Below are positions 44,364 to 53,544 of a stretch of DNA of 64,000 nucleotides, one piece after another. Below the pieces are notes generated by a model. The model saw only the letters and a program-made list of their open reading frames with translations. It searched no databases and was not told where the DNA came from. This stretch comes from Trichoplax adhaerens (Eukaryota > Animalia > Placozoa), in contig NW_002060965.1 in assembly GCF_000150275.1 (NCBI RefSeq), positions 124,001-188,000 of the forward strand, read 5' to 3'. Each line of letters starts with the position of its first letter. Position 1 is the first letter of the stretch. Position numbers and translations under genes: made by a program.

Positions 44364-47042
44364 ATGATGAATATCTGTATAACTATTTTACTGGCTGTTT
44401 TAGCCTTGACGGTTGTTGATGGCCATATCCGTTTAAACTATCCGAAGGCAAGAATGTATGATTTTGACTTTTTGGATAATGTTCGAACTCGCAGCCCTTG
44501 TGGTATGCCAGAAAATGCTACTGGCACAGGTATCTTTAAAACTAAATTGATCACAGGCTCTAAGATTAGTATTACTTGGCACATGGCATTTCCTCATGGT
44601 GGTGGTTTTCGTATCCAAATTTTACATGGTAACGGAACAATTTTACATGAATTAACCCCGACAAATAATACCAATCCATGGTATTCTATCAGTAATTCCA
44701 CTATTCAGAGCTATTTGGCTACTTTACCTAGTGGTTTTACTTGTGATCATTGCATTATTCGACTAACACGTAATGCCAAGGAATGGTCCACTCCTAGTGG
44801 ACCCTATATATTTTGGAGTTGTGCTGATGTAGAAGTCAATAATTTCCAATGCAATCAGTTAAATTGCTATCATGGAGGGAGCATAGCATCGAATTGTAAT
44901 TCTGCTTCAGCAGTTTGTTCATGCCCCAATAATCAATTCTCGGGCGATCGCTGCCAATATATGAATGAATGTGAAACTTACGCAGACTGTAATAATAATG
45001 GTCTATGTGTAACCATTAATCAAGATTATTATTATCCGTTAAAGCAGTGCTTCTGCTCGGCTGGTTTCTATGGCTATAAGTGCTCTAAAACTTCCAATTT
45101 AACGGTGGTTATGCCTAATGATGTTTCCTCTTATTCCTACACGAAATTAGACAATAGCAGTGAAATCTGGTATAAAATTCTATCTGCTACTAATGAAGTG
45201 GAGGTTATTCATAAAACATTATCTACTAGTTGGGTAGGTTTAGGCTGGAGGCCACAAGGATTAAAAGCATCTTGCCAATTTTTCCCTCCTGGAGCGGCAC
45301 CATGTCTTATTAGTGGACCTGAAAGCGCTGTAGGTGAAGGAGGAAATCAACCAGAGGGCAATTCTGAAAGTACAAGTAAACCAGAAGGGGGTGCAGAAAG
45401 TACTGCTCAACCTGAAGGCAACGCTGGAAGTACCGCTCAACCCGAAGGCAACGCTGAAAGCACTGCTAAACCCGAAGGGGAAGGTGGAAGTTCAGAAAGT
45501 GGCGGCGCTGCTGGCAATCTTGTAACCCATGCCATGGATTGTACCGATATGGTGATTGGTAGTGCTCGAGGGAATATGTTTCGATTATTTGATTACTATT
45601 CGCGTGATCGTAGTACACCTCGAATGGATTCCTATTTTGGTGGAGAAGACAGTATTACTGCAGCGGTGGGCTCCGAAAGCAACGGCTATACCACATTAAG
45701 ATGGCGTAAGCAGTTAACTGCAGAAGGAACCACCGATCATACTATTCAGGATGAAGTATTGGATGTTATTTATGCTTATGGTCAAAAGTATCCTTACTCT
45801 CATCAATTTCCATCCGGTCTGCATAATTCGCATCGCTTAACCAATTACTATAATGATGATGAGCTCAAATATCACGGTTATCAAAATCGTGGACGTAAAA
45901 GTCTCAATTTTTTTGGTGATTCCAAGTTAGTTACTAATACTTGTAGTGGTAGCTGGAAAACTGGATGTACCGGCAATTCTTGTTCTAATAACTTACAATG
46001 GAATATTTACAATGATGGAACAGTCCATTTTACAATGTCAGCAGTAACGGATAAATGGATTGGTTTAGGTATTTCAAATGATCATAAGATGGCCAAGACC
46101 GACGCCATCGTTGGTTGGGTAGGGAAAGTTGCCCCTGTCATTACCGATCGCTACATATCTAGCTATGCTCCTCCACCAGTTGATGCTGTATCCAATGTTA
46201 ACTTACTTGAAGGATCGAAATTGAATGGTACCACTACATTAAAATTCTATCGTCCAATTAATACGAGTGACTCACAAGATATCAGTTTACATGGCTGCCA
46301 TTACTTTATATTTGCGATTGGTGGTCAATATACTGATTCTAATTTTGCCATTTCCAAGCATGCCTCGACTCCATTTATTACAAGTCGAAAAATTTGTATC
46401 GATGTTAATCAGTGTTCAAAGTCTTATTCACCGTTAGGTATTGACATCATGACTTCTACTCCTTGTAGTGGAAGCTGGGGTACACGATGCCTGAATGGCC
46501 AATGCGCTAGCAATCTACGCTGGAATGTCTATAACGACGGAACGGTGCATTTCCAGATGTCGGCTGATACTGATAAATGGCTTGCAATGGGTATTTCTGT
46601 GGATAAGAAAATGCCATCTTCAGATGCTATCGTAGGCTGGATATCCCAGGGTACTGCAAAGTTAAGAGATCGCTTTCTTAAAGGTTATTTTATACCTGCA
46701 GTCGATGCAATTACTAATGTCGATTTAATTAATGGTTCTCTCATCAATGGTATAACGACGCTAAACTTTAAGCGTGCTATGAACACCTCGGATTCACAAA
46801 ATGATGTTAGTTTGCATGGTTGCCACTACTTTTTCTTGGGCACTGGTGGTAGTTATGATGATAATAACCTTGATATTGGTGTCCATCCTCAAACACCAGC
46901 TGTCGCTAAAATTCCAATGTGTCTTTATGCTAGTCGATGTACACAATTTAGTCCACCAGGAACTGGCGCAGCTGGCACTATTTTTACTCTAATTCATTTG
47001 GTCATTGCTGTCTTAAGCGTCTTGATTAGTAGTATTTTCTAA
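44364..47042 (+). CDS. Secreted, probably GPI-anchored LPMO-like (N-terminal His) + 2xEGF + 3xDOMON protein, 892 aa, intronless
   Basis: Signal peptide ends ...VVDG|H (His at 44424). A second His lies in WHMAFPHGGGFRI, followed by TCDHCIIRL...FWSCADVE. Two EGF-like Cys patterns. DOMON signatures WVGLGW...MDCTDMVIG...YHG and twice WxGxGIS..KM...DAIVGW...H. Hydrophobic C-terminus with no cytosolic tail. Confidence 0.9.
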   Translation: MMNICITILLAVLALTVVDGHIRLNYPKARMYDFDFLDNVRTRSPCGMPENATGTGIFKTKLITGSKISITWHMAFPHGGGFRIQILHGNGTILHELTPTNNTNPWYSISNSTIQSYLATLPSGFTCDHCIIRLTRNAKEWSTPSGPYIFWSCADVEVNNFQCNQLNCYHGGSIASNCNSASAVCSCPNNQFSGDRCQYMNECETYADCNNNGLCVTINQDYYYPLKQCFCSAGFYGYKCSKTSNLTVVMPNDVSSYSYTKLDNSSEIWYKILSATNEVEVIHKTLSTSWVGLGWRPQGLKASCQFFPPGAAPCLISGPESAVGEGGNQPEGNSESTSKPEGGAESTAQPEGNAGSTAQPEGNAESTAKPEGEGGSSESGGAAGNLVTHAMDCTDMVIGSARGNMFRLFDYYSRDRSTPRMDSYFGGEDSITAAVGSESNGYTTLRWRKQLTAEGTTDHTIQDEVLDVIYAYGQKYPYSHQFPSGLHNSHRLTNYYNDDELKYHGYQNRGRKSLNFFGDSKLVTNTCSGSWKTGCTGNSCSNNLQWNIYNDGTVHFTMSAVTDKWIGLGISNDHKMAKTDAIVGWVGKVAPVITDRYISSYAPPPVDAVSNVNLLEGSKLNGTTTLKFYRPINTSDSQDISLHGCHYFIFAIGGQYTDSNFAISKHASTPFITSRKICIDVNQCSKSYSPLGIDIMTSTPCSGSWGTRCLNGQCASNLRWNVYNDGTVHFQMSADTDKWLAMGISVDKKMPSSDAIVGWISQGTAKLRDRFLKGYFIPAVDAITNVDLINGSLINGITTLNFKRAMNTSDSQNDVSLHGCHYFFLGTGGSYDDNNLDIGVHPQTPAVAKIPMCLYASRCTQFSPPGTGAAGTIFTLIHLVIAVLSVLISSIF
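45348..45480 (+). repeat. Coding minisatellite: 30-bp/10-aa PEG(N/G)xxST(A/S)(Q/K) repeats
   Basis: The translation reads QPEGNSESTSK-PEGGAESTAQ-PEGNAGSTAQ-PEGNAESTAK-PEG. It is absent from the paralog. Confidence 0.9.
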
Positions 47043-47829
47043 CTGGTTCTACGTGCAGCATGATTAATGGGATTACTGCTCATGCTAATATTGATTCATT
47101 ATTCGGGTCTATTTGAAATAGAATATCGTATAGCTGATTCATTGCAATTTAGTAGAGTAAGGATTGATTTGTAATCAATTGCCACTGCTAGATGGGCCAT
47201 TAATTTTAGATTATATGCAAGCCACAAGCTGTTGTTAAAAAATTCAGTAAGTGATCATATTAATCTCAATTCTGCTTCTTTTTTTTCGTTAACAAATATA
47301 TCATATAATGAATGATACCGATTCAAAGGAATTAAGAATTTATATGTATTAATTTCTTAAAGTAGAGTAGATTATGGTGAAAATAAAATTCAAAAAGAAA
47401 AGGTATCTTATAGCAATGTTTATTTCTCAACAACACTGTACTTTCAGAAGATAAAATATTATGCTTAATTTTAATTAAATTGAAAAGTCGAGTTGTTCAG
47501 TAAAGTGTATTTCTGAACAACCTATCTAACCCGTTGTATCAAATAAAGTAAGCATTAAAATTTAGAAATGTTAAAGTTTAATAAAATTTATCTCTGAATA
47601 GGACTTTTTTGACGCATACATGAATTTGCTTCAAGGATAAAATTTCAACCATTGAGGCATTAAGAAAGTCCATTTGGAAATGTTTAGTAAAGTTTTCTTT
47701 CGACATAGCATTATGAACGCATTTCGTAAATATGCGTAAATGACAATATTTCAATAAATGTACGCCTGAAGAACAAGATTAAGTAGTAGTCTAAAATTTT
47801 CTATTCAATCCAATAGTAAGTAAGTGTAC

Positions 47830-48460
47830 AGAATTGTCCGTCAAGTAATTTCATAGAGTAGAATCGATTGAGTCTATGGGTCTGTTTTATATCACCTACA
47901 ATGATAATTGCTATAGCTCAATTCTATCTTATGGTAATACCTATATAAACCTATATAGACATGTAGACATACCATGCAATACTGTATAGATTTAAATGTA
48001 AGGTATTCGCATGATATAGTAGAACCTAACAGATGTACGAATTAAGCTGTTGTATATCATCTGCTTTGATCATTTACTATAACTCGATTCTATCCTTTGA
48101 TTATAGCTATATAGATATAACTTGTAATGTAGATTTATCCGTTAAGTATTTTCATAAAGTAAAGTAAAACCTAATTGATACAAGGGTTTGGCGGTTGTAT
48201 ATCATGTACAAGATTTCTAATTGCTATAGCTCGATTCGATCTTTTGGTTATACCTATATAAACATGCAGACATACCATGCAATATAGATTTATCCGTCAA
48301 GTACTTTCATAGTGGAATAAAACTTAATTGACACGAATATTAGGCTGTTGTATATCATCTACAATAATAATAATTGCTATAGCTCGATTCGATCTTTGGA
48401 TTACATCCATATAGATATGTAGATGAACCATATGATATAGATTAACCGTCAAGTATTTTA
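47830..48460. repeat. Degenerate tandem repeat, ~150-bp unit, ~4 copies
   Basis: TTGCTATAGCTC.ATTC.ATC variants near 47909, 48076, 48221 and 48374. CCGT(C/T)AAGTA and TGTATATCAT also recur. Confidence 0.8.
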
Positions 48461-48974
48461 TGGTCTTATTACAGACAGATCGTGAGCTCATCACTTTTTT
48501 AACAAATAAATTCAAAATTATATATGCTTGAGAATTTTAGCATTAGTCAAATTTTATTATCCCATTCTGCACAGATTATTGAGCATGTCTGTCGCTTCTA
48601 GACATTATTAATTAAGGATAGAATACTAGAATACATATTAAAATAGAAATATGTTGGAAATTAGCTAGATATGTTTCGAAAGATTATCAAATCAATTTTC
48701 TATTCCAGTAAAATTTTTACAATAAACAGAGTAATCACTATAGTTTTAATTAAGCGTTTTCTACTGACTTTCAGAGTATAATCTCTCCCTGTATACTACT
48801 TTACATATTAATTTTCTCTGCTTCGTTCTATTAACCTATCCGAGAAAGGGTAAAGGGATATCGCTGAATTGTGACTTAAACTAGTTAATTCATAGTACAG
48901 CATGATACATCAATAACAGCTGCCGATGCTTCTTGATGCCCTCCCTTTTCCCCAATTATGGAAATCATCACAAG

Positions 48975-49375
48975 AAATGGACTCCTGTAGCGTATTGCTT
49001 GAAGTCCTCAGAAAAGTATCCTAGCAGCTTAATTCAATAACTAAATAATTTCCTTCCCGCAGTTTATTTGCTTTAAACCACTTGGTAAGTACCCTAGTTA
49101 CGTCATAAAAACGTAGCCGAATTATAAAAACATTCAGCCTAATTAATTCTCTCCTGTAGCTTATAGCTTGAAATTATGAAAATACCTAATCAAAGTGATT
49201 CCCTCCTGCGATATCATGCTTAGATTATTAGGAAAGCACCCAAATGGATTCCTTCCTGCAGCTTATTGCTTCAAAACATAAAGGAAGCAAGCAAAAAAAA
49301 GCGGCGAAATTATGCACGCACTGAACTAAATGGATTCTTTCCTGTAGTTTATAGCTTTAAATCATTAGAAATGTA
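48975..49375. repeat. Six degenerate copies of a ~30-bp motif with variable spacers
   Basis: (GGA)TTC(C/T)(C/T)TCCTG(C/T)AG(C/T)TTAT(A/T)GCTT.AA variants near 48978, 49049, 49146, 49198, 49245 and 49331. Confidence 0.7.
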
Positions 49376-50202
49376 TCCTGGCCGTCTAATTGGAAAGTCA
49401 TACAGACTCACTTGCTATGAATGATCAAAGTGGTATTAAAGTGTAAGTAAACACCATCTTTTCACACTTGTTTCCTAACGCAGACAATTAAATTCGATAG
49501 AGGCATTTCAAGGCAGAAATGGCCGAGGATAATACAGTAACGAGCAGTTAAATGAAACTTGATGATATATTACATCGTCGATACGAAGTAACTGCAACCT
49601 TCAACTCTATCGATATAAATGATAATTTAATCCCTCAACACATTATACCTTCGACTTTAATCGGGATTAAATTTCTAGCTATCATCGATATTTTTGTACT
49701 TGCTCTTAAAGAAGCCATTTGTATAATGTCTTAATCCAACTGATCATTGGAAGCTTATTGTATATTGTTGCCATCGTTTATTGACAGCAGTCTATTATGT
49801 CAATAAATTCACTCCGATAACCAATTGGAGCTCCTGCATTAAATAGGAAATTGTAACAATTCTAATTATATAATTAATTATTGATCCTCTACCATGCTAT
49901 GTTATTGTCAAGGATTAAACCAGATGATTGGTTCGTAAGGAGATTATCGTAATAATGCTATAGGTGAAAAATAGAGAATAAGGTCATGACTTTACGGAAG
50001 AAACTCTCGCCAGTATAATTATAATCCCTGAGCAGACCTATACAAAAATAGCAGGAAGCGAACAAAGGCCAAAAAATGACTATTTAATCATCCATTTACA
50101 TACTTTCTTTGTGCTGATTTGAACTTTAGATCCAATTTTAATCTATATCAACAAGAAAGGCGTTGAGAGAACGAATAGTGGTGATCAATCCATGTATTCA
50201 AG

Positions 50203-52209
50203 ATGAATAAGTTGTGCTTTATTTTAATTGGGGTGTTGGCCATAACGATGGTCAATGGACACATTCGCATCCTCTTCCCAATATCTAGAATGTATGATTT
50301 CGATTTTATCGTCAATTTTAGATCACGAAGTCCTTGTGGAATGCCGGAAAATGCAACCGGCCAAGGTATCTTTAAAACGAAATTAGTTGCTGGTTCAACC
50401 TTTGATATGACATGGCATTTAGCATTTGCTCATCAAGGTGGATTTCGAATTCAAATTTTACAACGTAATGGAGTTGTAAGCCATGAATTAACACCGACCA
50501 ATGACTCGGTGCCATGGTTCTCCTCGGATAATGCTACTATTCAAAATTATCTTGTTACCCTTCCTCAAGGCTTTACTTGCGATCATTGCATTATACGCCT
50601 TATACGCGATGTCGCCGAAAGATCAACCCCTACTAAACCGTTCCAATATTGGAGTTGTGCTGATGTTGAAATTGGCAATTTTCCTTGTACACAATTAAAT
50701 TGTTACAATGGCGGAACGATAGCATCTAATTGTAATTCAGCATCGCCAACATGTAGTTGTGCTACTGGTCTTGTCTCGGGCAATCGATGCGAATTTGTCA
50801 ACGAGTGTGAAACAACTTCAGACTGTAATGGCAATGGCCAATGTCTGACTATTAACCAAGATTATTATTACCCTTTAAAGCAATGTTACTGTTCTCCTGG
50901 CTATTATGGCTATCGATGTTCCCAAACTTCGAGTCTTACTGTCGCTATGCCTAGCGATTTAACGTCATATTTCTATTTTCGACTGGATAAAAATAGTGAA
51001 ATGTGGTATAAAATGTTATCTGCTAGCAATGAAATTGAAGTAATCCATAAAACGCGATCGATTACTTGGGTAGGATTAGGCTGGCGACCACAAGGTTTGA
51101 TGGAGTCTTGTCAGTTTTATCCGGCCGGAGCAGCACCAGGTTTAGCTTTTGGTCCACCAGGTTCTCCTGGAGAGAGCAATCAAGCAGAATCAGATGCTAA
51201 GAAAACGCCAGTAAAGCATTCTATGGCTTGTACAGACATGGTGATTGGTAGTGTTCGCGGAAATACTGTTCGAATTTTCGATTACTACTCTCGTGATCGC
51301 GGTACACCTAGAAAAGATTCTTATTATGGCGGAATAGATAGCATTACATCAGCAGTAGGTTCAGAAGTCAACGGTGTTACAACGTTAAGATGGCGGAAAA
51401 AGTTAGCGGCCGATGGACCTACCGATCACACTATCATCGATGCACCCTTGGATATTATTTATGCTTATGGTCAAAAAGTGCCATTTACCCACGAGAAGCC
51501 TTCGGGTATTATTAATACCACTCGCGAAACGACATTTTATGGCGATGATGAATTAAAATATCATGGTTTTGAACATCGAGGTCGTCGTTCGCTCAATTTT
51601 TTCTCAGATAATCGATTGAATGCCGCTACCTGTGGCGGTAGTTGGACTTCCAATTGTGCAGGCAATACGTGTAGCCAAACTTTAGCGTGGAATGTGTATA
51701 ATGATGGAACAGTGCATTTCACGATGTCTGCAAAGACCGATAAATGGCTTGCATTGGGTATTTCCAACGACGCTAAAATGCCCAATTCCGATGCTATTGT
51801 GGGTTGGGTATCCAATGGAGCTGTTGTATTAATAGATCGCTTTCTCAAGACGTATTCTTTACCCGCTATCGACGCCATTAGCAATGTTCAAGTTGTCAAT
51901 GGTTCCCTTATTAACGGCGTAACAATCTTGAATTTTATTCGTCAAATTAATACTACCGATACGCAAAATGATATCAGTTTGCATGGTTGCCATTATTTTT
52001 TCTTTGGCGTTGGTGGAGCTTATAATAATAATACATTGGATATTGCAGCCCATCCTTCAATACCTGCTATCACTAGTCAAAAAATATGTATTGATGCCAG
52101 TCAATGTTCTCAATTTAAGCCACCAGGTAGTGGTACAGCTGGAATCTTTACCATAACCCATTTACTGACGACGATGATAGCCGTTGTCCTATCCAACATT
52201 TTGCTTTAA
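50203..52209 (+). CDS. Paralog: LPMO-like (N-terminal His) + 2xEGF + 2xDOMON protein with a GPI-like tail, 668 aa, intronless
   Basis: Signal peptide ends ...MVNG|H (His at 50260), followed by WHLAFAHQGGFRI and TCDHCIIRL...YWSCADVE. It is collinear with 44364-47042 but has one fewer DOMON and no PEG repeats. Confidence 0.9.
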   Translation: MNKLCFILIGVLAITMVNGHIRILFPISRMYDFDFIVNFRSRSPCGMPENATGQGIFKTKLVAGSTFDMTWHLAFAHQGGFRIQILQRNGVVSHELTPTNDSVPWFSSDNATIQNYLVTLPQGFTCDHCIIRLIRDVAERSTPTKPFQYWSCADVEIGNFPCTQLNCYNGGTIASNCNSASPTCSCATGLVSGNRCEFVNECETTSDCNGNGQCLTINQDYYYPLKQCYCSPGYYGYRCSQTSSLTVAMPSDLTSYFYFRLDKNSEMWYKMLSASNEIEVIHKTRSITWVGLGWRPQGLMESCQFYPAGAAPGLAFGPPGSPGESNQAESDAKKTPVKHSMACTDMVIGSVRGNTVRIFDYYSRDRGTPRKDSYYGGIDSITSAVGSEVNGVTTLRWRKKLAADGPTDHTIIDAPLDIIYAYGQKVPFTHEKPSGIINTTRETTFYGDDELKYHGFEHRGRRSLNFFSDNRLNAATCGGSWTSNCAGNTCSQTLAWNVYNDGTVHFTMSAKTDKWLALGISNDAKMPNSDAIVGWVSNGAVVLIDRFLKTYSLPAIDAISNVQVVNGSLINGVTILNFIRQINTTDTQNDISLHGCHYFFFGVGGAYNNNTLDIAAHPSIPAITSQKICIDASQCSQFKPPGSGTAGIFTITHLLTTMIAVVLSNILL

Positions 52210-53544
52210 AATATCGATGACCAACAATACGATGGGATATAGTATTCGGGTTATCGTCCAAGTTAGAAATACCGTGAATTCGACAATTTCCTATTTCATT
52301 CTGTTTAATTTATGTCTTAAAGTAGCGTTCTACAAGGTAGATTAAAAGGATAAAAAAAGATGTTCATAGTTTATCTGATATGCACGCGTATGCTATCGGC
52401 AGTAGACCAGTCTCTAACGCTCGTAATGATAAAATGAGGCAATTTAGAATAAATATAGTAAATTGGTGATAGAATTATCATAATTTCGGATTTGTCCATT
52501 GCATTCTATTATAGCTTTGAGTGGGATGATTTTTGATTCTGTGAATAAATTCAACTTGCTCATTTAAAATTGGCGATAGTTTGCCTAATCTAGGTAAAGT
52601 ATAACATAGAAATTGTTAGACAGTGGACTAATGATCATTATAACGATACGAAGATCAAGAGCTCTCAAAATCAACCTAGAATTTCAATCGTGAGGACTTT
52701 ACTTTCTTACATTTTATTCTTTCCAGTCATTTTCTTCCTTGATTTCATAAATTCAATCGTTACCAAATATAAATGAAATCTAAATGAATTAGGGAATCAT
52801 ATTCGTTACCGTGTAAGAACGAATCGGTTTTTAGCCCCATTGGATTCAGCATTCACCATCTCAAAATTGGAAATATAACAGAGCAAAGCTCTCACGTAGC
52901 ACAAATAGGTCAATACCGCTTTCAACCTTAAAAATGGTGTTGTTCATGATGATAGGGTTGGTAGAAGATGAATCCGCTTTTTCCTCCCTCATAACAACAG
53001 TTGAAACGTCTAAGAGGAACCCAGTCATCGACTTTAACTCTACAACAATTCTATACCACTCATTCAAAACCGAATCAAAGACTTCTTGACAATATTCTAC
53101 TTGGGAGTTAAGAACCTCATTAGCCTATTAATCAAAAACAGAATTTAATTTGGCTGTCGGCTGAGGCCTTTCATGTCCATAGTACGAATAGTACAAGTAT
53201 ATCGTTTCATCAGATCGCCATCTTTCATAGTTACTTTAATAAGCATAACAGACTATTCCACATCCTATAGAGCTTCATATTTCTACTGTCATTAACTGAT
53301 ATCCCTACAATAATATCAATATTAGGGCTCTGTAGACTATATTCGCATGCTAGAAACACAAGATAAAACATGATTACTTAGAAACTCTTCCATCCTCGTT
53401 CAGCTTACAAATGAACGTGGTATAAACGATGAGATTATCTTGATTTGGTCAATGTGTCTCCAATTTCTCAATCTAGACATGCATTAGTTTTGTACTACAG
53501 GTAAATAAAGGCGGAAATTAAGAATTAATAAATTGTCACAATCA

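What the first reader, a model, noticed from the sequence alone, without database searches (positions are those of the whole stretch)
44364..52209. Tandem pair of surface-anchored LPMO-like copper domains fused to multi-heme DOMON modules: a candidate self-powered oxidative system
Seen in sequence: in both proteins the first residue after the predicted signal peptide is His (44424; 50260). A second His follows in W-H-x-A-F-x-H-x-G-G-F-R-I (44595; 50431), then LP..TCDHC..RL and (F/Y)WSCADVE. Established: a free N-terminal His plus a second His form the copper histidine brace of lytic polysaccharide monooxygenases. The motif order H..L..P..R / PCG / W...H.G.(F/Y)RI / C..C.L / CAD matches bacterial SCE4755-type LPMO-like proteins as I recall them. 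Seen: every DOMON keeps a Met/His pair (gene 1: 45534/45873, 46089/46359, 46611/46884; gene 2: 51223/51562, 51778/52051). Established: this is the b-heme ligation of the cellobiose dehydrogenase cytochrome domain, the natural electron donor of fungal LPMOs. Inference: one GPI-tethered chain carries both the copper oxygenase and its heme electron relay. It could serve extracellular digestion of algal or biofilm polysaccharide, matrix remodelling, or copper handling. Similar EGF+DOMON proteins probably exist in other invertebrates (I recall Drosophila nahoda, unverified), but usually without annotation of the N-terminal domain.
Basis: partly seen in the sequence, partly recalled or inferred. Interest (0 to 1): 0.92.

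Follow-up and report, generated by a model that had tools for sequence, protein, structure and literature searches.

The report
Copper LPMO-like domain fused to heme DOMONs
Two neighbouring Trichoplax genes encode cell-surface proteins that join a copper-binding domain of the type used by polysaccharide-cutting oxygenases to two or three heme-type DOMON domains; they belong to the widespread but unstudied animal "nahoda" family, which probably passes electrons from heme to copper outside the cell.

Summary

- **N-terminal domain.** The ~140-aa domain has an LPMO fold. Pfam LPMO_10 scores above its cut-off. A family profile hits TdAA15A at E 2e-9, with His2 on His91 and the axial Phe/Tyr on Tyr184. 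The AF2 model (pLDDT 89.5) aligns to TdAA15A at Z 13.4, residue 1 on His1.
- **Conservation.** His1 directly after the signal-peptide site is kept in 94/96 relatives and His2 in 90/96. The DOMON Met/His pairs are kept in 69/69 and about 80/83.
- **Family.** This is the insect "nahoda" family, found from sponges to tunicates and functionally uncharacterised.
- **New support for a heme-to-copper relay.** Green-algal relatives carry the same module fused to a cytochrome b561 membrane domain.
- **Not supported.** "Self-powered" fails because the chain has no dehydrogenase domain and needs an outside electron donor. The usual second-sphere Glu/Gln is replaced by Tyr.

The substrate is unknown, and copper capture for uptake (Bim1-like) is a serious rival. 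The same stretch was noted elsewhere in this scan (s1-762710).

The parts
44364..44423 (+). Gene 1 signal peptide (aa 1-20), predicted cleavage V-D-G|H
   Evidence: Hydrophobic core with mean KD 2.55. The -3/-1 rule is conserved across the family. No SignalP run.
44424..44843 (+). Gene 1 LPMO-like histidine-brace domain (aa 21-160): His21, His78, axial Phe150
   Evidence: Pfam LPMO_10 27.7 bits against a cut-off of 23, and BIM1-like 18.3 bits, below its cut-off. NCBIfam SCE4755 family E 2.4e-8.
44844..45086 (+). Gene 1 two EGF-like modules (aa 161-241)
   Evidence: Weak Pfam EGF_2/EGF_TEN hits. The profile hits Notch, reelin and teneurin EGF domains in the PDB.
45111..45908 (+). Gene 1 first DOMON (DBH-like, aa 250-515) with Met391/His504. 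It is interrupted by a low-complexity insert (aa 318-385) containing a 30-nt tandem repeat at 45347-45478.
   Evidence: Pfam DOMON. Met and His are invariant in 69/69 relatives. TRF result.
45942..46403 (+). Gene 1 second DOMON (cytochrome-type, aa 527-680), Met576/His666
   Evidence: Pfam DOMON; CDH-cyt 22.2 bits, below the cut-off of 27. Conservation.
46464..46922 (+). Gene 1 third DOMON (aa 701-853), Met750/His841
   Evidence: Pfam DOMON, three stretches. Alignment A2.
46947..47042 (+). Gene 1 C-terminal GPI-signal-like tail and stop codon
   Evidence: The last 20 aa have mean KD 2.57 and no charged residue in the last 22, preceded by PPGTGAAG. No NetGPI run.
50203..50259 (+). Gene 2 signal peptide (aa 1-19), predicted cleavage V-N-G|H
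50260..50682 (+). Gene 2 LPMO-like histidine-brace domain (aa 20-160): His20, His77, axial Tyr149
   Evidence: Pfam LPMO_10 29.8-30.8 bits against a cut-off of 23. AF2 model pLDDT 89.5. Foldseek: all 44 hits at E<=0.001 are LPMOs or LPMO-like proteins. VIA-align: TdAA15A Z 13.4, rmsd 3.2 over 138 residues, model residue 1 on chain residue 1. SCE4755 family E 1e-11.
50683..50922 (+). Gene 2 two EGF-like modules (aa 161-240)
   Evidence: Pfam EGF_Teneurin, weak. Profile hits to EGF structures.
50950..51603 (+). Gene 2 first DOMON (aa 250-467), Met341/His454
   Evidence: Pfam DOMON, two stretches. Met and His invariant in 69/69.
51631..52095 (+). Gene 2 second DOMON (aa 477-631), Met526/His617
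   Evidence: AF2 model pLDDT 94.4. VIA-align: DBH DOMON Z 15.4, CDH cytochrome domain 1d7b Z 14.6, CcPDH cytochrome b domain 6jt6 Z 14.5. Met526 aligns to a Met in 6jt6 and to Leu in DBH. Met and His are invariant in 31 aligned sequences.
52114..52209 (+). Gene 2 C-terminal GPI-signal-like tail and stop codon
   Evidence: PPGSGTAG followed by an uncharged hydrophobic end.

Best explanation
The two genes are tandem paralogs of the metazoan 'nahoda' family in Trichoplax adhaerens. Each encodes a membrane-tethered extracellular redox protein.

The domain order is:
1. A signal peptide whose removal exposes His1.
2. A compact (~140 aa) LPMO-fold domain that binds one copper in a histidine brace (His1 amine and side chain plus His77/78, with an axial Tyr/Phe).
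3. Two EGF-like spacers.
4. Two (gene 2) or three (gene 1) DOMON domains that each bind a b-type heme through a Met/His pair, as in the cytochrome domain of cellobiose dehydrogenase and in CYBDOM proteins.
5. A GPI-type C-terminal signal.

Proposed mechanism: the DOMON hemes take single electrons from an outside donor. That donor could be extracellular ascorbate or a plasma-membrane cytochrome b561, which the genome encodes. The hemes pass the electrons along the chain to the Cu(II) site. The resulting Cu(I) reacts with O2 or H2O2 to oxidise a still unknown extracellular substrate.

Shown here: the domain identities, the folds, residue conservation, transcription of gene 2 as one uninterrupted exon, and the natural fusion of the same module to cytochrome b561 in green algae.

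Inferred: copper and heme binding, heme-to-copper electron transfer, the GPI anchor and the chemistry at the copper. The chain is a relay, not a self-contained power source.
For: - **LPMO fold and brace.**. The TdAA15A ligands His1, His91 and Tyr184 come from PMC5823890.
- **Conservation of His1, His2 and the axial residue.** Counted in 96 relatives.
- **DOMON identity.** Pfam E 2e-57 and 3e-39.
- **DOMON fold.** It is equal in score to the heme-binding cytochrome domains.
- **Met/His pairs.** Near-invariant. The non-heme DBH DOMON has Leu at the Met position. The motif S-x-D-x-x-M...D matches the predicted heme site of CYBDOM DOMONs (PMC10691727).
- **CDH-cyt hits.** Other family members pass Pfam's CDH-cyt cut-off: 147.5, 56.1, 47.7 and 40 bits.
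- **Rosetta-stone fusions.** Bryopsis P0172, P0204 and P0208 have the order LPMO-like, EGF, DOMON, Cytochrom_B561 (28.6-30.2 bits against a cut-off of 23).
- **Possible electron donors.** Cytochrome b561 genes are present in this genome.
- **Membrane tethering.** It is universal in the family, as either a terminal hydrophobic tail or a TM helix plus cytoplasmic tail.
- **Transcription.** Gene 2 is covered end to end by contigs from RNA libraries, while flanking stretches are empty.
Against: - No metal or heme binding has been measured for any family member; nahoda appears in the literature searched only in gene lists.
- The Glu/Gln two residues before the axial residue is Tyr here (73/96). That Glu/Gln is present in TdAA15A (Glu182 by alignment) and is regarded, from my own knowledge, as important for LPMO catalysis.
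- The L2 region is much shorter than in AA15.
- In sequence, the later DOMONs are closest to the DBH DOMON, which binds no heme.
- For these two genes the CDH-cyt hits are below Pfam's cut-off (22.2 and 13.7 bits).
- The fourth paralog (TRIADDRAFT_60676) lost His2 and the axial aromatic residue but keeps every DOMON Met/His. The DOMONs therefore have a role that does not need the copper site.
- The algal fusions rest on gene models and one assembled contig.
Confidence: 0.55

Rival explanations
1. Copper capture and reduction for uptake (Bim1/X325-like). The surface-tethered histidine brace binds Cu(II). The DOMON hemes reduce it to Cu(I), which is released to a Ctr1-type importer. No substrate is oxidised.
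For: - 11 of 26 family N-domains hit Pfam BIM1-like (best E 1.5e-6) against 9 for LPMO_10. The insect nahoda proteins hit only BIM1-like, over the whole 140-position profile.
- The domain size (~140 aa) and the GPI-type tether match X325/Bim1 (PMC10952591, PMC7529816).
- LaX325 aligns at Z 10.7.
- The LPMO second-sphere Glu/Gln is missing, and a conserved Glu139 (81/96) could serve as a carboxylate ligand.
- Ctr transporters are encoded in the genome.
- CYBDOM proteins are metal reductases (PMC10784552).
- A crab homolog carries His-containing octapeptide repeats that hit the prion copper-binding repeat model.
Against: - The BIM1-like scores are below Pfam's cut-off: 18.3 bits for gene 1, and no hit up to E=10 for gene 2.
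- Fold and profile similarity are highest to the catalytic AA15 and AA10 families.
- An axial Phe/Tyr typical of LPMOs is kept.
- Whether any residue fills the fourth equatorial position, as the Asp of X325 does, could not be tested.
- Two to eight hemes per chain seems excessive for a simple metal reductase.
Confidence: 0.2
2. Classical digestive or matrix LPMO. The copper domain cleaves chitin, cellulose or algal polysaccharide at the feeding surface, and the DOMONs serve only to prime it.
For: - Pfam LPMO_10 scores above its cut-off.
- The nearest structure is the chitin- and cellulose-active TdAA15A.
- An equally small chitin-active LPMO domain of 142 aa (5aa7) aligns at Z 11.4.
- Cytochrome-type DOMONs are the natural reductants of fungal LPMOs (established knowledge).
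Against: - The family is membrane-tethered and not secreted, and it lacks any carbohydrate-binding module.
- The L2 surface region is short and unusually conserved (D34, F35, L36, D37) across phyla with very different diets and matrices.
- Glu/Gln is replaced by Tyr.
- No chitin synthase was detected in the Trichoplax genome.
- The related X325 proteins show no polysaccharide activity.
Confidence: 0.12
3. Non-redox adhesion or receptor protein. The EGF and DOMON modules bind ligands or sugars, and the LPMO-like domain is a binding module that has kept ancestral residues.
For: - Some DOMON-superfamily members bind sugars; CBM9 aligns at Z 7.1.
- EGF modules, SEA domains and long cytoplasmic tails in arthropod and mollusc members resemble surface receptors.
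- One Trichoplax paralog lacks His2.
Against: His1, His2 and both DOMON ligand positions are near-invariant over the whole metazoan range, and these positions rank among the most conserved columns. The fusion to cytochrome b561 in algae makes sense only for electron transfer.
Confidence: 0.1

Closest known systems
AA15 / AA10 lytic polysaccharide monooxygenases (Pfam PF03067; TdAA15A, PDB 5msz)
   Same: Same beta-sandwich fold (Z 13.4). The N-terminal His, the second His (on His91) and the axial Tyr/Phe (on Tyr184) align. The C-x-x-C and C-A-D motifs are shared. The Pfam score is above the cut-off.
   Different: - About 55 residues shorter, mainly in the L2 region.
- Tyr in place of the Glu two residues before the axial residue.
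- Tyr/Phe in place of Ala89.
- Membrane-tethered and fused to EGF and DOMON domains.
- No activity data.
Bacterial SCE4755 family polysaccharide monooxygenase-like proteins (NCBIfam NF043005)
   Same: The best full-length sequence-family match to the 146-position model (E 2e-8 and 1e-11), with the same motif order and size. Bacterial members appear among the homologs (P0164, P0181, P0189).
   Different: The scores are below the 75-bit equivalog cut-off. The bacterial proteins lack EGF and DOMON modules and instead carry, for example, a MYXO-CTERM anchor. That family is itself uncharacterised.
X325 / Bim1 LPMO-like copper proteins of fungi (Pfam PF20238; LaX325, PDB 6ibh)
   Same: A small histidine-brace domain on a GPI-type tether. 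Many family members give sub-threshold BIM1-like hits. Fold similarity is Z 10.7.
   Different: Below Pfam's cut-off here. The presence of the extra Asp ligand of X325 could not be established. X325 proteins carry no heme domains.
Cellobiose dehydrogenase cytochrome domain (AA8) and CYBDOM/AIR12 DOMON cytochromes
   Same: DOMON fold (Z 14.6 to 1d7b). The Met/His pair sits at matching places. AIR12 has a GPI-anchored format, and CYBDOM is wired to cytochrome b561, as in the algal relatives. AA8 domains reduce LPMO copper.
   Different: In CDH the heme domain is fed by its own flavin domain and acts on a separate LPMO molecule. Here there is no dehydrogenase, and the copper domain is on the same chain.
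Dopamine beta-hydroxylase / MOXD1 (DOMON plus copper monooxygenase)
   Same: This is the other animal architecture that joins a DOMON to a copper oxygenase. The DBH DOMON is the closest solved structure in sequence (E 1.7e-11) and fold (Z 15.4).
   Different: DBH uses the two-copper PHM-type catalytic core, not a histidine brace. Its DOMON has Leu at the Met position and binds no heme.

Membership tests
LPMO (AA10/AA15 type, Pfam LPMO_10) | Score above the curated Pfam cut-off | tested here: met
   27.7 bits (gene 1) and 29.8-30.8 bits (gene 2) against a cut-off of 23. Only the C-terminal half of the profile (positions 81-183) is matched.
LPMO (AA10/AA15 type, Pfam LPMO_10) | His as first residue of the mature protein | tested here: met
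   V-x-G|H follows a hydrophobic core. His is kept in 94/96 relatives, with small residues at -1 and -3. Model residue 1 aligns to residue 1 of TdAA15A and to the first mature residue of AA10s. The cleavage site was not confirmed by a predictor or experiment.
LPMO (AA10/AA15 type, Pfam LPMO_10) | Second brace His and axial Phe/Tyr at homologous positions | tested here: met
   In the profile alignment to 5msz, His2 falls on His91 and Phe/Tyr on Tyr184. The ligand identities come from PMC5823890.
LPMO (AA10/AA15 type, Pfam LPMO_10) | LPMO beta-sandwich fold | tested here: met
   Foldseek: all 44 hits at E<=0.001 are LPMOs or LPMO-like proteins. VIA-align Z values run from 13.4 down to 9 across AA15, AA10, AA11, AA16, AA13 and AA9.
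LPMO (AA10/AA15 type, Pfam LPMO_10) | Second-sphere Glu/Gln two residues before the axial residue | tested here: not met
   The position aligned to Glu182 of TdAA15A is Tyr in 73/96 and Phe in 7/96. A conserved Glu139 lies elsewhere; its position relative to the copper is unknown.
LPMO (AA10/AA15 type, Pfam LPMO_10) | Copper-dependent oxidative cleavage of a polysaccharide | not testable with these tools
   Needs protein and product analysis.
X325 / Bim1-like copper proteins (PF20238) | Score above the curated Pfam cut-off | tested here: not met
   Gene 1 scores 18.3 bits against a cut-off of 27, and gene 2 has no hit up to E=10. 11/26 family members match at E<0.01, none shown above the cut-off.
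X325 / Bim1-like copper proteins (PF20238) | Carboxylate (Asp) filling the fourth equatorial copper position | not testable with these tools
   No residue-level alignment to LaX325 and no model coordinates were available. Glu139 and Asp34 are candidates only.
X325 / Bim1-like copper proteins (PF20238) | GPI anchor | tested here: inconclusive
   The C-terminal pattern fits a GPI signal. No GPI predictor was available.
Cytochrome-type (heme b) DOMON: AA8 / CDH-cyt / CYBDOM | DOMON fold | tested here: met
   Pfam DOMON E 2e-57 and 3e-39. The model (pLDDT 94.4) aligns to 1d7b at Z 14.6 and to 6jt6 at Z 14.5.
Cytochrome-type (heme b) DOMON: AA8 / CDH-cyt / CYBDOM | Met and His axial heme ligands | tested here: inconclusive
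   - Both residues are near-invariant.
- The Met aligns to a Met of 6jt6 and to Leu in the heme-free DBH.
- The offsets in the structural alignment to 1d7b fit Met65/His163 within a few residues.
- No residue-level alignment for the His was obtained.
Cytochrome-type (heme b) DOMON: AA8 / CDH-cyt / CYBDOM | Pfam CDH-cyt score above cut-off | tested here: not met
   22.2 and 13.7 bits against a cut-off of 27 for the two window genes. The cut-off is met by relatives P0079, P0007, P0063 and P0052.
nahoda family (LPMO-like, EGF, DOMON surface proteins of animals) | Same domain order and collinear homology over the whole ectodomain | tested here: met
   Hits named nahoda (Rhodnius, Carabus) at E 1e-108 to 1e-92. 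The N-terminal domain, EGF and both DOMON types align.
Self-contained LPMO plus reductase system (CDH-like) | An electron-generating dehydrogenase domain (FAD, PQQ) on the chain | tested here: not met
   No such Pfam domain appears in either protein.

The most novel reading that the evidence does not exclude
The nahoda family, with its green-algal b561-fused relatives, would be a previously unrecognised class of cell-surface machine. A trans-plasma-membrane electron chain (cytosolic ascorbate, then cytochrome b561, then DOMON b-hemes) would end at an LPMO-type histidine-brace copper on the same or a neighbouring polypeptide. That would be the first native, covalent wiring of an LPMO-like copper centre to its cytochrome. 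It would be conserved from sponges and placozoans to insects and tunicates, and it would perform oxidative chemistry on a conserved non-chitin extracellular substrate.
Probability: 0.4. Interest if true: 0.85.

Novelty: new variant of a known kind. Interest (0 to 1): 0.7.

Why it matters
LPMO research has treated the copper enzyme and its cytochrome reductant as separate proteins. It has also treated animal LPMOs as chitin or cellulose tools of arthropods. Here the two partners sit on one conserved, membrane-tethered chain in an animal that appears to lack chitin synthase, and the same family runs through most invertebrate phyla.

The family includes a named but unstudied Drosophila gene, so genetics is available. 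The algal fusions to cytochrome b561 make a concrete electron path testable.

If the relay works, it gives a natural model for heme-to-copper transfer. It may also reveal a new extracellular oxidative or copper-handling function in animals. The open literature searched holds only a one-sentence mention of the LPMO_10/DOMON/EGF grouping (PMC6950343). A 2023 review of histidine-brace proteins (PMC10952591) never mentions DOMON and lists electron transfer as an unknown role for histidine-brace proteins.

Tried and rejected
- **Profile search for a CDH alignment.** I searched the PDB with a full-length family profile hoping for a residue-level alignment to the CDH cytochrome domain. Only DBH and AA15 aligned in sequence, so the His ligand mapping stays indirect.
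- **X325 primary paper.** The paper (doi 10.1038/s41589-019-0438-8) is not held, so the position of its Asp ligand could not be compared.
- **ESM Atlas.** It did not hold the window domain. A sponge homolog gave only leads: BIM1-like, LPMO_10 and SCE4755 clusters.
- **Gene 1 expression.** The single read-laying run showed no contig on the gene 1 3' end (46500-47090). The tool warns that holes prove nothing, so gene 1 expression is unresolved.
- **Literature search for native fusions.** A search for native LPMO-cytochrome fusions returned only separate AA8 proteins and engineered or free-standing cytochromes.
- **Rejected: prokaryotic or contaminant origin.** A paralog on another scaffold is letter-identical to TRIADDRAFT_60676.
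- **Rejected: 'multi-heme' in the c-type sense.** The proteins contain no CxxCH motifs; the claim is one b-heme per DOMON.
- **Not available.** SignalP, NetGPI, HHpred and model coordinates.


Full report
**1. What is there**

The region holds two uninterrupted ORFs on the + strand: 44364-47042 (892 aa, gene 1) and 50203-52209 (668 aa, gene 2). They lie 3.2 kb apart in AT-rich DNA.

The genome is Trichoplax adhaerens. A paralog on another scaffold of the same assembly (L016) is letter-identical to P0006, which NCBI names TRIADDRAFT_60676.

The genome has four such genes, all single long open frames. The N-terminal domains of genes 1 and 2 are 65% identical.

Contigs from two RNA-seq libraries, and from two runs guessed to be RNA, cover gene 2. 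One contig of 2559 nt spans 49858-52400 without a joint. The stretches 46500-47090 and 48470-49060 are empty in all four runs. Gene 2 is therefore very probably transcribed as a single exon. Gene 1 expression is unresolved.

**2. The N-terminal domain**

Evidence for an LPMO-type domain:
- Pfam LPMO_10 matches both proteins above its curated cut-off: 27.7 and 29.8 bits against 23.
- A profile of 26 family members finds the Thermobia AA15 enzyme 5msz at E 2e-9. In that alignment the second His lies on His91, the T-C-x-x-C motif on its counterpart, and the F/Y of (F/Y)-W-S-C-A-D on Tyr184.
- These are the copper-site residues reported for TdAA15A (PMC5823890).
- An AlphaFold2 model of gene 2 residues 20-164 is confident, with pLDDT 89.5 and pTM 0.85.
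- Foldseek returns only LPMOs and LPMO-like proteins among its 44 hits at E<=0.001.
- VIA-align gives TdAA15A Z 13.4 (rmsd 3.2, 138 residues) with model residue 1 on chain residue 1. AA10s score Z 11-12.6, aligned from their first mature residue. LaX325 scores Z 10.7.

NCBIfam's SCE4755 family model covers the whole domain at E 2e-8 and 1e-11, below its 75-bit equivalog cut-off. Bacterial homologs found in the representative search pass the cut-off.

Conservation in 96 aligned domains:
- His1 is kept in 94/96. It sits directly after A/G/S/C at -1 and mostly V/A/S/T at -3, behind a Leu-rich core. This is the classical signal-peptidase pattern.
- His2 is kept in 90/96.
- The axial position is F81/Y6.

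Departures from catalytic LPMOs:
- The residue aligned to Glu182 of TdAA15A is Tyr (73/96).
- The residue aligned to Ala89 is Tyr/Phe.
- The L2 region is about 30 residues shorter and unusually conserved (D34, F35, L36, D37).
- Eleven of 26 family domains give sub-threshold hits to Pfam BIM1-like, against nine for LPMO_10.

The family therefore sits between AA10/AA15 and X325.

**3. The DOMONs**

Pfam finds three DOMONs in gene 1 and two in gene 2 (E 2e-57 and 3e-39), with weak CDH-cyt hits.

The first DOMON is DBH-like and is split by a low-complexity insert; gene 1 carries a 30-nt repeat there. Its Met (M-D-C-x-D) and His (K-Y-H-G) are invariant in 69/69 relatives. In the later DOMONs, Met is kept in 81/83 and His in 79/83, and both are invariant in a 31-sequence alignment.

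Evidence on heme binding:
- The Met aligns to a Met in the cytochrome b domain of Coprinopsis PDH (6jt6) and to Leu in human DBH. By established knowledge, and as PMC10691727 notes, the DBH DOMON lacks the heme ligands.
- The local motif resembles the S-x-D-x-x-M-G-x-D motif that the same paper describes around the predicted heme Met of CYBDOM DOMONs.
- A model of the gene 2 second DOMON (pLDDT 94.4) aligns to the DBH DOMON at Z 15.4. It aligns to the cytochrome domains of cellobiose dehydrogenases and CcPDH at Z 13-14.6. The ranges put Met50/His141 of the model within a few residues of Met65/His163 of 1d7b.
- Relatives from abalone, ark clam and annelid pass Pfam's CDH-cyt cut-off.

Heme binding is therefore well supported by inference but has not been shown.

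**4. The family**

Full-length relatives include proteins named nahoda in Rhodnius and Carabus, many other insects, crustaceans and springtails. Nematodes and a nematomorph, molluscs, an annelid, hemichordates, a tunicate and a sponge are also represented.

All share the same N-terminal domain, which precomputed Pfam annotation mostly leaves blank.

Every member is membrane-tethered, in one of two ways:
- a hydrophobic stretch at the very C-terminus (placozoans, hemichordates, tunicate), which is GPI-like;
- a TM helix with a 35-235-aa cytoplasmic tail (arthropods, molluscs).

The representative library holds 294 clusters at E<=0.001.

In the literature searched, nahoda appears only in gene lists. 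Voshol et al. 2019 note in one sentence an early-branching group of 'DOMON/EGF and LPMO_10' sequences (PMC6950343). A review of histidine-brace proteins never mentions DOMON and lists electron transfer as an unknown role for histidine-brace proteins (PMC10952591).

**5. Evidence on mechanism found here**

Green-algal relatives carry a signal peptide, A-H start, LPMO-like domain, EGF and DOMONs, followed by a Pfam Cytochrom_B561 domain above its cut-off. These are Bryopsis P0172, a EukProt model P0204, and P0208 on a 4070-nt assembled contig.

In CYBDOM proteins, cytochrome b561 carries electrons from cytosolic ascorbate to the extracellular DOMON heme (PMC10784552 and PMC10691727). A copper domain at the far end of that same chain is best explained as the electron acceptor.

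The Trichoplax proteins lack the b561 part, and they also lack any dehydrogenase. They therefore need an external donor. The genome encodes several b561 genes. This is why 'self-powered' is not supported while 'electron relay' is.

**6. What the copper does**

Two readings remain open:
- **Oxygen or peroxide chemistry on a substrate.** This is favoured by the AA15/AA10-like fold and the axial aromatic residue.
- **Copper capture and reduction for uptake.** This is favoured by the BIM1-like signal, the small size, the GPI-type tether and the missing Glu/Gln. Ctr transporters are present in the genome.

A plain chitin or cellulose digestive role is less likely. There is no CBM, the proteins are tethered to the membrane, the conserved surface is shared across phyla, and no chitin synthase was detected here (absence in a six-frame search is not proof).

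The fourth paralog has Asp in place of His2 and Val at the axial position, yet keeps all DOMON ligands. The DOMONs therefore also work without the copper site.

**7. Verdict**

This is a new variant of known kinds (LPMO-like histidine-brace proteins and DOMON cytochromes) in a named but unstudied animal family. I put 0.55 on a heme-to-copper surface redox protein, 0.2 on Bim1-like copper handling, 0.12 on a classical LPMO and 0.1 on a non-redox role.

Noticed in passing
L011:634-1977 (-) = G000:C1408, about 4191484-4192827: A fifth LPMO_10-positive gene in the genome (447 aa, 26.7 bits). It has a signal peptide ending E-A|H and a C-x-x-C / C-S-D-V pattern. It has no EGF or DOMON; its ~280-aa C-terminal part has no Pfam match.
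   Followed up: partly
L016:1014-4061 (-) = TRIADDRAFT_60676: This paralog has four DOMONs. Its copper site is degenerate (His2 to Asp, axial Phe to Val), but His1 and all DOMON Met/His pairs are kept. It may be a copper-free relative.
   Followed up: partly
window 47155-48360 and 48126-48459: Contigs of run X1 (depth about 60) cover 47155-48360 between the two genes, where no ORF exceeds 63 aa. A 153-nt tandem repeat (2.2 copies) lies at 48126-48459. This may be a gene 1 3' UTR or a non-coding transcript.
   Followed up: no
window 44364-44453 (protein P0004): The stored gene model for gene 1 (862 aa) starts at Met31. It omits the signal peptide and His21, so database annotation of this gene would miss the histidine brace.
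   Followed up: yes
P0172, P0204, P0208 (green algae): Ulvophyte proteins join the LPMO-like, EGF and DOMON modules to a cytochrome b561 membrane domain. Other algal models (P0205, P0209) lack the b561 part.
   Followed up: partly
P0093 residues about 1045-1130 (Petrolisthes crab homolog): About a dozen F-G-H-P-P-S-G-S octapeptide repeats hit Pfam's prion copper-binding octarepeat model (38.6 bits against a cut-off of 32) in a nahoda-family protein.
   Followed up: no
P0157/P0195 cluster, P0164: The stand-alone copper domain also occurs in a haptophyte (Prymnesium) and in myxobacterial MYXO-CTERM-anchored proteins. The domain therefore predates the animal fusion.
   Followed up: no
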